The notes below the pieces were generated by a model. The model ran no database searches and was not told where the DNA came from. It saw nothing but the letters and a program-made list of their open reading frames with translations. Position numbers and translations under genes: made by a program. Positions 4,714-12,270 of a DNA stretch of 64,000 bases are shown one piece after another. Each line of letters starts with the position of its first letter. The first letter of the stretch is position 1. The DNA is from Hypanus sabinus (lineage: Eukaryota), in assembly GCF_030144855.1 (NCBI RefSeq), contig NC_082717.1:67828001-67892000 (forward strand), in the 5' to 3' direction.

Positions 4714-6346
4714 TGAATCTGAAATTGCATTGCCCTAGAACATTCTAGTAAGTATTTTCTGAAACCCCTCCTAGCTTTTCACAACCTTACATCCAATGAA
4801 GTCTTTCAATTCTGTATATCAGGTATTGAAAACTTGCTTATGCATTTGTTTGGTTTATACTTTATGAAAAGCAGGTTGAAAAATAGTATGGTGAAAAACA
4901 AGTAGCAACAGAACACATTTTCAAGTAATTGTTGCTTATAATCTCTAAAGTAATATATAAATAACCCTACCTTTATTGGGGGAACTTTTTGCAGATCAGC
5001 AAAATCTGAAATTATTTAGACCTAACTTTAAGAAGAGAGTTTACCCTTTGAACTAAATTCTGCTCCACTTCCGAAGTCTTTGCTTTCAATTGGACAGGAC
5101 ACTCAAGATTTGGCCTATGACCCTTCACAATTATAGCAGTTATTGGCCAATTGAGTTGTGAATCAATCCCAGTCCCAGTGATGCAAACAAAAGAGGTCAT
5201 TCCTGTGTTATATAAGATTTTTCTTTAAAGTGATATCGTACATTGGAAACAAAAATATTTTGGATAATTCTTTTGGTCTTGGAAATTCCATGCCTTCTAA
5301 ATTTAGCACAATAACATTGTGGTATAATCCAGAATGAAGTAAGTACTAAAATAGTTAAACAGAGAGCAGGTTACTAGCCTAGGTTTATCGTTAATCAGAT
5401 ATTGAAGATTAATGAATGATCTATTTGAGATGTCTGAGATTATTAAAAGATCAGTGTCTTCCTCTGATGTGGGAGCCTGTAACGCAGAGTATAACTTTAC
5501 ACTAATATCTAGGTCATTCCAGTGGAAAATCAGGCAACTCTCCTTCTATGACCCCATTATTGGAAACCTGGAGCTCTCATCCAAAAAAAAAGTTAGTAGG
5601 TTATAGCTCAATGGAAGGTTTCAGAAATGAGGTCATGTATTAGGCAAGGCTATTCTGGAAACAGTTAACCAATGGAATTAAGATACAGATTGGCTATAAC
5701 TAATTGAATAGTGGGGCAGCATAAACTGCTGAATGTCCTACTCCCGTTTCCAAATTATGTCCAAAAAGCGAACAATGATTTCCATTTATAATATCTCTTT
5801 TCAAGATGGCCCAAAGTAACTTGCAGCCACAGAGGTCCTTTCTGAAAGCTGAACAGCTATGCTGTAGCAAGTAGAACAGCCAATCTGTACAGTGCAAGCT
5901 TCCAAAGACAGCATTACGATGACATCCAGATGACCTTTACCCTTTCATCAATCTGATCACACTTTAAGTGCAAGTTTATTTATTTTTAATATTTTTTAAA
6001 ACAGCAATGCACTCTTTCGACATATACACATTTATATAATATAAATTAATGTTGTATTCTTAGTATGTAGTTTTAAAATGATGGACTAAAATAACTAGCA
6101 TCACTTGCTAGACAATTGAGTTACTCCATGCAGTAGGAGTACTGAAGGCACCAACATGATTATTAAAAATATATTTTTCTAATCTGGGAGACATGTCTTT
6201 TGAGAGAATTGGTTAAGGGTAGACAAGGAAAAGGAAAACCGGTCACTCCTCAGGCAGTATAATTTCTCAATTTAAAGCAAGATAGACTAATTCAAAGTTT
6301 ATTTTAAAAATTTCACTCTAAAATGTTGTTTCTATTAATAGAAATG

Positions 6347-7564
6347 TTCTTTCTTTCTTTCTTTCTTTCTTTCTAAATCTTTTTATTAATATTAGTAATA
6401 TGGACAGAATACAGATGATATATTGATAAAGAAATTACCAACATACACATTCCATTACATATGAAAAAAAACATACATAATAGTTACAATATAAATGAGT
6501 TTACCAAGACATAAGCCATAAGATATATGTATGGACATAGTAAATCTAAATATTTCATAATGTATAATATAAAAAAAACAGAAAAAAGAAAGAAAAAAAC
6601 AAAAAAAAATTATATAATGCAGAACTAGCTAATCTAATCTAATAACTATAACTAATAAGTAATATAAAAGAAAAAAAACAAAAGAGAAGGGAAAAAAAAA
6701 CGGGCTGTTTATAATATCTCACAAAAATAAGTATTCATCAATGCCGTCACTTCCGGTCCTCTCAAAATACATAAGCTGAAAGCTGGGAAATCAAATGAAC
6801 TTGGCACAGGGTCATATTACATCATATGAAAATGTTGAATAAATGGTCTCCATAACTTTTCAAATTTAATAGAAGTCTCAAAAGTACCACTTCTAATTTT
6901 TTCTAAATTTAAACATAACATAGTTTGAGAGAACCAATTAAATACAGTGGGAGGATTAATTTCTTTCCAATTCAACAATATAGATCTTCTAGCCATCAGA
7001 GTTAGAAATGCAATCATTCGACAGGCAGAAGAAGATAAATGCAGTGAATCTAACATTGGTAAACCAAAAATTGCGGTAATAGGATGAGGTGGTAAATCAA
7101 TATTCAAAACCGCAGAAATAATATCAAAAATATCTTTCCAGTATTTCTCCAAAAATGAACACGACCAAAACATGTGAGTTAAAGACGCAATTTCAGAATG
7201 ACATCTATCACAAATAGGACTTATATGAGAGTAAAAATGAGCTAATTTATCCTTGGACATATGGGCCCTATGTACGACCTTAAATTGTATTAGTGAATGT
7301 TTGGCACATAACGATGATGTATTAACTAATTGAAGAATTCTATCCCAATTCTCACTAGAAATACTAAAACTAAGCTCTCTTTCCCAATCCTGTTTAGTCT
7401 TATAAAGAGGCTCTGAACGTATCTTCATAATTATATTATAAAGTTTTGAAATAAGCCCTTTTTGAAAAGGGTCTAATTCAAATAAACTCTCCAAAGTATC
7501 TGAAGGCACAAAATTTGGAAACGTAGAGAGTACAGAACTTAAAAAATGTCTAATCTGTAAATAT
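6347..7564 (-). mobile_element. 5'-truncated L1-clade LINE with 3'UTR, AATAAA and (AAAG)n tail
   Basis: ORF2 C-terminal region; minus strand ends 'aataaaaagatttag(aaag)n' at 6347-6390. Confidence 0.9.
6817..7563 (-). CDS. L1 ORF2 C-terminal fragment (zf-RVT, CCHC), partial
   Basis: Open frame YLQIRHF...QFKVVHR...CDRCHSEIASLTHMFWSC...W; truncated at the 5' end. Confidence 0.85.
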   Translation of the reverse strand, partial: YLQIRHFLSSVLSTFPNFVPSDTLESLFELDPFQKGLISKLYNIIMKIRSEPLYKTKQDWERELSFSISSENWDRILQLVNTSSLCAKHSLIQFKVVHRAHMSKDKLAHFYSHISPICDRCHSEIASLTHMFWSCSFLEKYWKDIFDIISAVLNIDLPPHPITAIFGLPMLDSLHLSSSACRMIAFLTLMARRSILLNWKEINPPTVFNWFSQTMLCLNLEKIRSGTFETSIKFEKLWRPFIQHFHMM

Positions 7565-7788
7565 ACTTTAAGTGCAAGTTACTTCACTGGAAAGATATCC
7601 TTCTGTTCTTCGAGCTATGCCGTGAGATTGTTCACTCCCACCTCAGAAAGCCGATGGACCTCCGTTAAACATCTCACCTAAGATGCAACATTTTCAAAAC
7701 TATATAGCATTCCTTCAGTACTAGAAAACTGGCCTCAAGGTCCGTAATTATGCTGTTGAAGTTGAGCTTAAACCAACAGTCTTCCGCT

Positions 7789-7910
7789 TTCAAGATATTA
7801 ACATCACTCAAGTTCATTTGAAATTTATCCTGGTTAAACAGGCAAAATTTCCAAAAAATGATAATGTAGTGTAACTAAAGACTACTTTTCCTATTTCTCA
7901 TGTACCTACA
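7789..7910. repeat. 122-bp dispersed duplication, copy 1 (copy 2 at 9989-10110)
   Basis: Direct alignment with about 7 mismatches and no gaps; 2200 bp apart. Confidence 0.95.
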
Positions 7911-8459
7911 GTTATTTTCCAATTGCCAATATGAGGCAAGTAAAAACTATTACTAGAACTATTTAGATTAAAGTACAAAATGCTTAACAATATTCCACAT
8001 TTCTAGAGAACTCTCTGATTTATAAGCAGTTTGAATGCTAAAATGACAGGTTCGCTGAACAATTCTGTTCCAGAACAGAAGATAGATTTCACTTGGTTAC
8101 ATTAATACATACAAAATGGGGAAAAAAAACAATATATGTACGCACAAGATATACAACAAATGTTAATTAAATTCCTAAACAAACATTTCTGGAGCCATAA
8201 TATGCTTTGCTATTGGAACATTAGGAGTTGATGATCAGAAGGAAAAGTCTGCATTTATAGAAAGCATAACTGTGATGTACAGCCGTAAAATTGAACTTAA
8301 AGTAAAATGTTTCAATTTGACACTCACATACTGACACGGTAATTGGCATATCTGAGGAAATATTTTCTTAGACAATTATGACACCATACAGGAAACATGA
8401 GTGAAAATAAGCTTTTTAAACTCACAATCTGACAGAATTACATTGAATTGATGGGAGTA

Positions 8460-9403: not shown

Positions 9404-12270
9404 TGATATGGCTTCAACTGGTGTATTCACACTTCAGTGAGAGAAAGAGAAAGAGCAATACGCAAGCGAGGGCAACAGATCATATGTAGTGCTAAGGGGA
9501 GTCATTGTTCTAAAAGAAATAAATCCATGCATTACACTTCCTACCCCTTTAGATTAATATAACATAAAACTGTATATGTATAACACATTCAATTGCCCTT
9601 TTACCAACCATATTTGAATAAACATGCTTTTATAGTAACGGTCCATGACTAACTTCAGTCTTTTGGGTAATGCTCTGTTTCTTTCAGAATAGCGCCTCTA
9701 GACGTGTGGCGTGACATCAGGTTTGGTGGGTGCCTTGTCAAAGACAACATTCTCGGTTGCCGATGTCATGTTGCTGTTAGAGGCACGACTGTCTCTGAGA
9801 GGTAAGTCCAGTGGTTGTAATGTGTCCGTCTTGTTGGATGCATTCGACTCAGGTGTGTACTTCGGCTGAGCATCCAGTGTCTGGTCCACATGACGTCACC
9901 CTGTCTAATCTCCAACATCCACTGTGTACATCAATGGTCCAGTTCTTGTACCTACTAACTCCTCAAGTCACATCTCCTCTCTTCATTCTTCAAGATATTA
10001 ACATTGCTCAAGTTAATTTGAAATTTATCTCAGTTAAACAGGCAAAATTTCCAAAAAATGATAATGTAGTGTAACTAAAGACTACTTTTCCTATTTCTCA
10101 CGTACCTACATGGCCAAAGCCCACAAAAACCCAACAGCTTTCATACAGACAAGAAAGAATAACGTCTCTCTCATTGGTTAAAGTCCTATTATCACTAGTC
10201 ATAACACAAACATAGCAGCTACGTGAGAAACCATTACATCAGCAATTAACAGTACAGGGAAGTCATTACATAAATGAGCTGATTGTGGATTACAGGAGGA
10301 ATGGAGGCGGACTAACCCCTATTTACATCAATGGATCTGGGGTTGAGAGGGTGAACAGCTTTAAGTTCCTCAGCATACACATCACCGAGGAACTCACATG
10401 GCCTGTACATACCGGCTGTGTGGTGAAAAAAGCACAATAGTGCCTCTTTCACCTCAGATGGTTGAAAACCTTTGGTATGAGACCCAAATCCTAAGGACTT
10501 TCTACAGGTGCACAATTGAGAACATCCTGACTGGATGCATCACTGCCCGGTATGGGACCTGTACTTCCCTCAGTCGCAGGACTCAGCAGAGAGTAGTGCA
10601 TCTATAGATGTGAACTTCTCACTTCTCAGGACATTTACAGAGACAGGTATGTAAAAAGGGCCTGAAGGATCATTGGGGACCTGAGTCACCCTAACCACAA
10701 ATTGTTCCAGCTGCTACCTTCTGGAAAATGGTACCACAGCATAAAAGCCAGGACCAACAGGCTCCAGGACAGCTTTTTCCACCAGCCCATCAGACTGATT
10801 AATTCATGCTGATACAACTGTATTTCTATGTTATATTGACTGTCCTGTTGTACATACTATTTATTATAAATTATTATAAATTGCACATTGCACATTTAGA
10901 TGGAGACATAACATAAAGATTTTTACTCCTCATGTATATGAAGGGTGTAAGTAATAAAGTCAATTCAATTCAATTCAATTCAATTCAAATTATCAACAAA
11001 GCTGACCTTGCATCAAGCTCCATTTTCAGTTTTACACCAGACTCACCTTTTGTGTTCCATATGATTTTGTGATCTGCTTTAGTAATACTATGCAGTTCTA
11101 GGCATGACATCTCACTTTTGTCTGACTCAGTGTTGTCTGTTTCTGTTGCATATTTGGTCATTTTATGCACTTGCTTAGTTTAGTGTTTGAAATTTTTCAC
11201 TCGGTTGTGTTTCTTTTCTGCATTGCACACTTTATGTGACCTTGTCTTTGACACTTTCTGCAAGCTTTTTTATCTGAACCAATAGTCATGGGAGGATTTG
11301 CCTCATCAATAACAATTTTTGGCTTTTTACACCATTCAGGTACATTTTGTGCATTTCACATTCTAGACTCTTTTTCTGTAGTTCTGCTGCATCCTTTGCT
11401 GCAGTCTCTAACAATATTGCAAAGGTCACTGCCCATTCCAAGCTTAGGTCTCTTTCAAACAGTAGCTTCCTTTGAGTGCTTTGACTAAGCATGCTACATA
11501 CAAGCCTGTCCCTCGATCCATCAGGAAGTCCATCTCTAAGGTCACAGTATTGTGAGAGTTTGCATAGTTCTTCAATGTATTCAGAAATGTTTTCATCGTT
11601 TGACTGATCTCTTTTGTAAAATCTAAATCTCTCAGTTATTACCAGTGGTTAGGTGATTTTGTATAATTGTCACAATTTCATTGACCGTCTTGCTTGCTGG
11701 CTTTTCAGGAGTTACTAAGTTGTGTAAGAGACTGTATGTCCTAGTGCCCACTAAGCTAAGAATTGTGAGGGCTTTCTTTTCCTCATCAACATTGTTCACA
11801 CCACAATACAGTTCAACCCTCTTGCCTTACGACTTTCAGCCTTCTTTAGCACTTTTGCATTAATCAGCTTTCCCCGACTAAAGCCATCGCCACATTATTT
11901 TCACTTTACCCTTGCCAGCTGCACGCATTTCACTGTGTACTTTGCAGTTCCTCAAGCATCCTTTTGTTAGCGTCTGTGATGGTCTACTCCGCACTGTTTC
12001 CTTTCACTGCCTTGTCCCGTAATCATCCTACAGCTGTCGGTGCAGTTGGTGATATTCTCTGACATTCACGTTTGTACTTATTGCCAATTTGTTGATTGTG
12101 GACTGATGTATTCACATTACAGTGAGAGAGAGAGAGAGAGAGAGAAAGAGTGAGGGAGAGAAAGCATTGCACATATATAGACAACAGATCAATACTCATA
12201 CGTTGTCAGTAGTCCATACGTAGTGCTAAGGGGAGTCATTGCTTTAAAAGAAATAGATCCATATATTACA
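9404..12270 (-). mobile_element. Degenerate, internally deleted Gypsy LTR retrotransposon
   Basis: Related LTRs ~9404-9536 and 12090-12270 (both end 'attaca'); PPT at 9537-9550; PBS-like 'aattggcaataag' at 12077-12089; gag remnant 11290-11890 (LSLVGTRTYSLLHNLVTPEKP, ERFRFYKR, TQRKLL); protease start KMELDARSA near 11000; integrase tail RTGPLMYTV...RHVDQ near 9880-9950. Confidence 0.85.
10271..10987 (+). mobile_element. Rex1/Babar-type LINE 3' portion nested in the Gypsy element
   Basis: ELIVDYR...FKFL...FYRCTIENILTGCITA motifs; (CAATT)n tail 10961-10987. Confidence 0.85.

What the first reader, a model, noticed from the sequence alone, without database searches (positions are those of the whole stretch)
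5961..7580. L1 insertion with apparent ~370-bp 3' transduction
Seen: a perfect 16-bp direct repeat ACTTTAAGTGCAAGTT at 5961-5976 and 7565-7580. It brackets the truncated L1 (6347-7564, with its own AATAAA and (AAAG)n tail) plus an extra non-L1-looking segment 5977-6346 that ends in a second A-rich tail on the minus strand. The outer flanks rejoin into one SINE, which marks the empty site. Known: L1 read-through carries 3' flanking DNA in mammals. Inference: the same process operated in a cartilaginous fish, and the segment tags the source L1 locus.
Basis: partly seen in the sequence, partly recalled or inferred. Interest (0 to 1): 0.72.

Follow-up and report, generated by a model that had tools for sequence, protein, structure and literature searches.

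The report
Stingray L1 carrying extra 3' DNA
A young, front-truncated L1 jumping-gene fragment in a stingray genome carries 370 bases of unrelated DNA behind its normal tail, inside one pair of 16-base target duplications; the well-known read-through mechanism (3' transduction) fits best, but the donor locus could not be looked up.

Summary
The sequence observation holds. A perfect 16-bp direct repeat (5961-5976 and 7565-7580) brackets a minus-strand element. The element has an open 248-codon L1 ORF2 C-terminus (7564-6820), a T-rich 3'UTR, AATAAA (6387-6382) and (GAAA)7 (6374-6347). A 370-bp non-L1 segment follows (6346-5977) and ends in an A/T-rich tract next to the repeat.

Two diverged relatives on public contigs (L002, L004) share the terminal block TAATAAAAAGATTT..(AAAG)n. 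Unrelated DNA follows that block in both. The family's normal end is therefore most likely the (AAAG)n tail, and the segment is not part of those relatives' 3'UTR. The segment is unique in the window, non-coding, not pol III-like, and differs in composition from the L1 3'UTR.

3' transduction is the best reading (about 0.6) but is not proven:
- The closest copies (Hypanus sabinus, 96% and 85% protein identity) could not be read as DNA, so no source locus was identified.
- The distal end is not a true poly(A) tail.
- The claim that the flanks form one SINE could not be verified.

The mechanism is well known in mammals. The scan already holds another 3' transduction note on other DNA of this genome. 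Interest is modest.

The parts
7565..7580 (.). Target-site duplication, copy at the 5' side of the minus-strand element
   Evidence: Exact 16-mer
6820..7564 (-). 5'-truncated L1 ORF2 C-terminal fragment, 248 codons, open frame. The stop codon is at 6819-6817.
   Evidence: zf-RVT hit. Aligns to human ORF2p 1034-1231, E=5e-12. 96% identical to the L1 part of a Hypanus sabinus protein model. Homology to L001 and L004 starts at 7564.
6375..6816 (-). L1 3'UTR, 50% T on the element strand, with AATAAA at 6387-6382
   Evidence: The terminal 38 nt are 95% identical to the L004 L1 end. The terminal 27 nt are 93% identical to L002.
6347..6374 (-). Canonical L1 tail, perfect (GAAA)7
   Evidence: TRF. The same (AAAG)n tail follows the conserved block in L002 and L004.
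5977..6346 (-). 370-bp non-L1 segment, the candidate transduced 3' flank of the source element
   Evidence: No similarity to the window, to the L1, or to the flanks downstream of relatives' tails. Balanced A/T composition unlike the UTR, eight T4-5 runs, no open stretch above 34 codons. No tRNA or Rfam hit.
5977..5997 (-). A/T-rich 3' terminus AAAAAATATTAAAAATAAATA, with ATTAAA (5990-5985) and AATAAA (5984-5979). This is the likely priming site.
5961..5976 (.). Target-site duplication, copy at the 3' side of the element. The first-strand nick is inferred at 5'-AAGTT/AC on the + strand.
   Evidence: The nick site is inferred from the TSD boundary.

Best explanation
This is a single target-primed reverse-transcription event of an L1-clade element in a stingray (probably Hypanus sabinus).

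Inferred sequence of events:
1. A transcript that included the 3' part of a source L1 was not terminated at the element's own AATAAA/(GAAA)n end. It ran about 370 nt into the DNA downstream of the source.
2. The L1 endonuclease nicked the target at 5'-AAGTT/AC.
3. The exposed ...GTT-3' end paired with an A-rich tract (..AAAUAAAUA) of that read-through RNA.
4. Reverse transcription copied the flank, then the L1 tail, 3'UTR and the last 248 codons of ORF2, and stopped early (5' truncation at 7564).
5. Second-strand nicking 16 bp away produced the 16-bp duplication.

Shown here: the TSD, the L1 identity, the internal canonical L1 end, and the non-L1 nature of the segment. Inferred: the read-through transcript, the priming site, and the existence of a source locus with this 3' flank.
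For: - A perfect 16-bp TSD encloses both the L1 and the segment.
- The 5' junction is clean, with homology to other copies starting exactly at 7564.
- The L1's own end is internal. The block TAATAAAAAGATTT..(AAAG)n is the only conserved part of the 3'UTR in two diverged relatives. In both it is followed by DNA unrelated to each other and to the segment.
- A more distant L1 (L006) also ends in AATAAA, about 14 nt, then an A-rich tail. Vertebrate L1s are described as ending this way (PMC5381506).
- The tail joins the segment with no extra A run, like a genomic tail/flank boundary.
- The segment's composition differs from the T-rich UTR. It has eight T4-5 runs, so a pol III or SINE RNA is unlikely. 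It has no tRNA or Rfam hit and no coding potential.
- The known L1 chimeras described in 10.1101/2025.02.02.635956 put the partner RNA 5' of the L1, not 3' of it.
- The family is young and multi-copy in Hypanus sabinus, with copies at 96% and 85% protein identity and an open frame here.
- The scan holds another followed-up 3' transduction note in this genome (s1-193300; not checked by me).
Against: - No source locus was found. No genome-wide search of the segment was possible.
- The distal end is not a poly(A) tail. The last AATAAA ends 2 nt before the TSD, so the RNA end was not made by that signal in the canonical way. Internal priming on an A-rich tract has to be assumed.
- A further AATAAA at segment position 44 (6303-6298) also had to be bypassed.
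- The only relatives with readable 3' ends are 72-75% identical. Their ends are not confirmed by TSDs. A subfamily-specific 3' extension therefore cannot be excluded.
- The empty-site (SINE) argument is unverified.
Confidence: 0.6

Rival explanations
1. Subfamily-specific long 3'UTR. In the window's own L1 subfamily the 370 bp are part of the element and (GAAA)n is an internal microsatellite. An older transduction would have become fixed in a master copy. This insertion would then be an ordinary 5'-truncated copy.
For: - The closest copies (96% and 85% protein identity, Hypanus sabinus) could not be read as DNA.
- The 3'UTR body is already unalignable between the window and L002/L004. Those relatives therefore say little about a young subfamily extension.
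- Their ends lack TSD confirmation.
- A weak, non-significant resemblance exists at the very start of the segment to the L004 flank (CATTTC, TTAATAGAA; z about 2.3).
Against: - The conserved terminal block sits at the point where similarity ends in all three copies.
- The segment's composition (A 35%, T 37%) is unlike the T-rich UTR (T 50%).
- There is no significant similarity of the segment to what follows the tail in L002, L004 or L001.
Confidence: 0.12
2. Template-switch or RNA-ligation chimera. Reverse transcription started on an unrelated A-rich-ended RNA (the 370-nt part) and then jumped to the 3' end of an L1 RNA. The two RNAs were never neighbours in DNA.
For: - It gives the same final structure: one TSD, both parts in the same orientation.
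- L1 chimeras formed by template switching or ligation are documented in mammals (10.1101/2025.02.02.635956).
- The segment ends with ATTAAA/AATAAA like a transcript 3' end.
Against: - The chimeras described there have the L1 as the 3' partner, not the 5' partner.
- The junction shows the complete L1 tail followed at once by the segment, without a poly(A) run or untemplated bases. This looks like a genomic tail/flank boundary.
- The eight T runs speak against a pol III partner RNA.
Confidence: 0.13
3. Two separate events. An ordinary L1 insertion produced the 16-bp TSD. The 370 bp were later inserted or captured by break repair exactly between the L1 tail and the TSD.
For: - A 3-nt AAC stands both before the segment (6348-6346) and at the start of the TSD copy (5976-5974), read on the minus strand. 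The tail could once have joined the TSD directly.
- A-rich tails are favoured L1 targets (general knowledge).
Against: - No second TSD of meaningful length flanks the segment. Two of the three shared bases belong to the GAAA unit.
- The event would need to land exactly at one boundary.
- The segment is in the same orientation with an A-rich 3' end abutting the outer TSD, which a single event explains more simply.
Confidence: 0.07

Closest known systems
L1 3' transduction in human and mouse (Moran 1999, Pickeral 2000 and Goodier 2000 are cited from my own knowledge; Pickeral 2000 is cited in PMC5381506; about 25% of tumour insertions carry one, PMC13009371 abstract)
   Same: One TSD pair, a 5'-truncated L1, the element's own weak poly(A) signal and tail internal, and unique downstream DNA attached in the same orientation with an A-rich end at the TSD.
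   Different: - The host is a cartilaginous fish.
- The element's tail is (GAAA)n rather than pure poly(A).
- The distal end is a short A/T-rich genomic-looking tract with no poly(A) tail 10-30 nt after a signal.
- The source locus is not identified.
L1 chimeric insertions (U6/L1, Alu/L1 and mRNA/L1; 10.1101/2025.02.02.635956)
   Same: Two unrelated sequences in the same orientation inside one TSD, made during TPRT.
   Different: In those chimeras the non-L1 part is 5' of the L1 3' end. Here it is 3' of a complete L1 tail.
Scan note s1-193300 (same genome, other DNA): L1 copied with about 500 bases of its old flank, including a SINE
   Same: Same genome and same proposed mechanism.
   Different: A different locus and a crippled mini-L1. 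I did not check whether it is the same L1 family.

Membership tests
L1-clade non-LTR retrotransposon | ORF2 C-terminal domain with the Cys/His zinc motif, homologous to L1 ORF2p | tested here: met
   zf-RVT, E=3.5e-6, just above the curated cut-off. Aligns to human ORF2p 1034-1231, E=5e-12. CDRC...H...C is conserved in the alignment.
L1-clade non-LTR retrotransposon | APE-type endonuclease plus reverse transcriptase in ORF2 | tested here: inconclusive
   These domains are absent from the window copy because of 5' truncation. The relative L004 (72% nt identity) has an ORF aligning to human ORF2p residues 8-909, endonuclease included, E=4e-175.
L1-clade non-LTR retrotransposon | 3'UTR ending in AATAAA followed by an A-rich tail | tested here: met
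   AATAAA at 6387-6382, then (GAAA)7. Same in L002, L004 and L006. Described in PMC5381506.
TPRT insertion by L1 endonuclease | Target-site duplication of about 7-20 bp flanking the whole insertion | tested here: met
   16/16 bp, not expected by chance.
TPRT insertion by L1 endonuclease | Nick site resembling 5'-TTTT/AA | tested here: inconclusive
   The inferred site is 5'-AAGTT/AC. Only the TT/A core matches.
L1 3' transduction | The L1's own tail and poly(A) signal are internal, followed by non-L1 DNA inside the same TSD | tested here: met
L1 3' transduction | The transduced DNA ends in a new poly(A) tail downstream of a second poly(A) signal | tested here: inconclusive
   ATTAAA and AATAAA are present, but only 2-9 nt of A/T-rich sequence follow them. 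There is no pure A run.
L1 3' transduction | The segment maps immediately 3' of a source L1 elsewhere in the genome | not testable with these tools
No assembly DNA is served. No hit in metagenome contigs.
L1 3' transduction | Other family members lack the segment | tested here: inconclusive
   Met in two diverged relatives. The closest copies were not readable.
Template-switch L1 chimera | The partner RNA is joined 5' of an L1 3' end. It is often a small pol III or snRNA. | tested here: not met
   The partner lies 3' of the L1 tail. It has eight T4-5 runs and no Rfam or tRNA match.

The most novel reading that the evidence does not exclude
A currently active stingray L1 lineage with a (GAAA)n tail can start reverse transcription on an internal A-rich tract of a read-through RNA that has no poly(A) tail. 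The 370-bp tag would then identify a live source element, for example one of the near-identical copies such as the one inside the METTL21A gene range of Hypanus sabinus. This would be a documented L1 3' transduction and source tracing in a cartilaginous fish.
Probability: 0.3. Interest if true: 0.4.

Novelty: new member of a known kind. Interest (0 to 1): 0.3.

Why it matters
If confirmed, the 370-bp tag is a natural barcode. It points to the source L1 and shows that read-through mobilisation of flanking DNA, well studied in mammals, also operates in the diverse low-copy L1 lineages of cartilaginous fishes. It would also give a concrete case for asking whether such L1s need a poly(A) 3' end for priming. 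It does not change how L1 is understood. It is one more instance of a textbook by-product, and the scan already holds another instance from this genome.

Tried and rejected
- **Second copies in the window.** BLASTN of the segment, the L1 and both flanks found only themselves, apart from an unrelated 131-bp duplicate.
- **Close L1 copies through proteins.** Three word searches found Hypanus sabinus models at 96%, 85%, 65% and 63% identity.
- **ENA and Logan contigs.** L001, L003 and L005 stop or break before the L1 3' end.
- **Exact look-ups.** The window's 230-aa and 33-aa ORFs are not on record.
- **JGI metagenome contigs.** Scans for a 25-mer of the segment and for the conserved L1 terminal block found nothing.
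- **TSDs of the L1 copies in L002 and L004.** None were found.
- **SINE claim.** The joined empty-site model found no spanning copy with sensitive BLASTN and nhmmer. There were no tRNA or Rfam hits.
- **Earlier findings by sequence.** These came back blank.
- **Rejected: pol III or SINE origin of the segment.** It has eight T4-5 runs and no pol III head.
- **Rejected: coding cargo.** The longest open stretch is 34 codons.

Full report
**Observation**

The 16-mer ACTTTAAGTGCAAGTT stands at 5961-5976 and 7565-7580 with no mismatch. The repeat cannot be extended on either side. Block-wise shuffles of the window give on average 0.12 exact 16-mers repeated within 3 kb. The few real ones other than this pair belong to longer duplications. 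The repeat is therefore real and not a chance match.

**Anatomy of the element, read on the minus strand**

- **TSD copy:** 7580-7565.
- **ORF2 fragment:** 7564-6820 is an open 248-codon frame ending at a stop at 6819-6817.
  - It carries the zinc-binding domain of non-LTR reverse transcriptases (zf-RVT).
  - It aligns to residues 1034-1231 of human L1 ORF2p (E=5e-12).
  - A relative on contig L004 has an ORF aligning to human ORF2p 8-909, endonuclease included (E=4e-175). The family is a true L1-clade element.
- **5' truncation point:** DNA homology to independent copies (L001 83%, L004 72%) begins exactly at 7564. The relatives continue upstream with L1 sequence where the window has the TSD.
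- **3'UTR:** a 442-nt stretch that is 50% T (6816-6375), with AATAAA at 6387-6382.
- **Tail:** a perfect (GAAA)7 at 6374-6347.
- **Extra segment:** 370 nt (6346-5977), ending AAAAAATATTAAAAATAAATA directly against the second TSD copy.

**Which genome**

The best protein matches are Hypanus sabinus models whose matched parts are L1 ORF2, at 96%, 85%, 65% and 63% identity. The scan's own notes call the genome a stingray. The family is thus multi-copy and young there. The open frame and perfect TSD agree with a recent insertion.

**Is the (GAAA)n the normal end of this L1?**

Two diverged relatives with readable 3' ends were fetched through their proteins: L002 (75% in the ORF) and L004 (72%). 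Their 3'UTR bodies do not align with the window's. The last 27-38 nt do, at 93-95%: TAATAAAAAGATTT, two variable bases, then (AAAG)n.

In both relatives, what follows the tail is unrelated to the other relative and to the window's segment. Local alignment scores were at or below those of shuffled sequence.

A distant L1 (L006) also ends in AATAAA, about 14 nt, then an A-rich tail. Boissinot and Sookdeo describe the same architecture for fish, frog and lizard L1: T-rich UTRs, then AATAAA, then a tail (PMC5381506).

The canonical end is therefore very probably at 6347, and the 370 nt lie beyond it.

There are caveats:
- The relatives are distant.
- I found no TSDs for them.
- Contigs L001, L003 and L005 break or stop before the end.
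- The close Hypanus copies could not be read.

**What the segment is**

- It has no second copy in the window or in any fetched locus.
- It has no tRNA or Rfam match on either strand.
- Its longest open stretch is 34 codons.
- It has eight runs of four or five T on the element strand, which would stop RNA polymerase III.
- Its composition is balanced (A 35%, T 37%, GC 28%). This is unlike the T-rich L1 UTR, and somewhat more AT-rich than the neighbouring DNA.

It looks like ordinary non-coding genomic DNA.

It contains AATAAA at its position 44, and ATTAAA and AATAAA at positions 357 and 363 of 370. The last signal ends 2 nt before the TSD, so there is no proper poly(A) tail.

**Mechanism**

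The simplest single-event account is 3' transduction.
1. A transcript runs through the source L1's AATAAA/(GAAA)n into its 3' flank.
2. The target is nicked at 5'-AAGTT/AC on the + strand. This is only a partial match to the L1 TTTT/AA preference.
3. The ...GTT-3' end pairs with the A-rich tract of the RNA.
4. Reverse transcription proceeds through the flank, tail, UTR and 745 nt of ORF2, then aborts.
5. A second nick 16 bp away gives the TSD.

The junction between tail and segment has no extra A run or filler, like the genomic tail/flank boundaries seen in L002 and L004.

What is inferred rather than shown: the read-through RNA, the internal priming, and the source locus.

**Rivals**

1. **Subfamily-specific 3' extension**, itself an older transduction fixed in a master copy. 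This cannot be excluded without the close copies. The start of the segment and the L004 flank share CATTTC at the junction and TTAATAGAA a little further on. The alignment score is only about 2.3 sd above shuffles and is within their range.
2. **Template-switch or ligation chimera.** The documented L1 chimeras have the partner 5' of the L1 (10.1101/2025.02.02.635956). Here it is 3' of a complete tail.
3. **Two-step insertion at the tail/TSD boundary.** Only a 3-nt AAC is shared, and two of those bases belong to the repeat unit.

**What could not be done**

I followed its instruction to go on with other tools and did not resend or trim the stretch.
- Scans of JGI metagenome contigs for the segment and for the L1 terminal block found nothing, as expected.
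No copy spanning the junction exists in the window or in the first four fetched loci. From memory the flank resembles shark SINE cores, but that is a recollection and not a test.

**Comparison and verdict**

This works like mammalian L1 3' transduction. It meets the structural criteria except for a genuine second poly(A) tail. The source-locus criterion is untested.

The scan has already followed up another 3' transduction on other DNA of this genome (s1-193300; not checked by me). It has also followed up a twin-primed L1 (s1-207093). Ordinary L1 by-products therefore appear to be present in this stingray.

My literature searches found no report of L1 transduction in cartilaginous fishes. The library is incomplete, so this is weak evidence of novelty.

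I rate this as a new member of a known kind, with confidence 0.6 in transduction and interest 0.3.

Noticed in passing
window 7780-7910 and 9980-10110: A 131-bp direct repeat, 92% identical, with start-to-start spacing of exactly 2200 bp, just right of the insertion. It is not part of the L1 event. It could be a local duplication or two copies of a short repeat.
   Followed up: partly
proteins P0048, P0050, P0049, P0144 (Hypanus sabinus RefSeq models): Models named METTL21A isoform X1 and BBS5 isoform X1 consist entirely of L1 ORF2 sequence. fam185a isoform X1 has an L1 ORF2 C-terminal tail, and IQCB1 isoform X1 is 68% identical to an L1 ORF2. These look like L1 copies inside genes that were annotated as protein isoforms.
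   Followed up: partly
L001 989-1471: The 83%-identical L1 copy on this ENA contig loses homology about 145 nt into the 3'UTR. It continues with unrelated DNA that carries a 173-codon minus-strand ORF with no Pfam match. This is either an interrupted copy or a chimeric contig.
   Followed up: partly
window 6346-6320 (minus) and L004 4249-4276: The DNA right after the (AAAG)n tail begins CATTTC in both copies, and both have TTAATAGAA within 30 nt. It is not significant against shuffles (z about 2.3), but it is odd for two supposedly unrelated flanks.
   Followed up: yes
window 6303-6298 (minus): An AATAAA lies 44 nt into the extra segment. Any read-through transcript would also have had to pass it.
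   Followed up: no
window 8288-8303 (minus): A 14/16 match to the TSD 16-mer lies on the opposite strand, about 700 bp to the right. It is probably chance.
   Followed up: no
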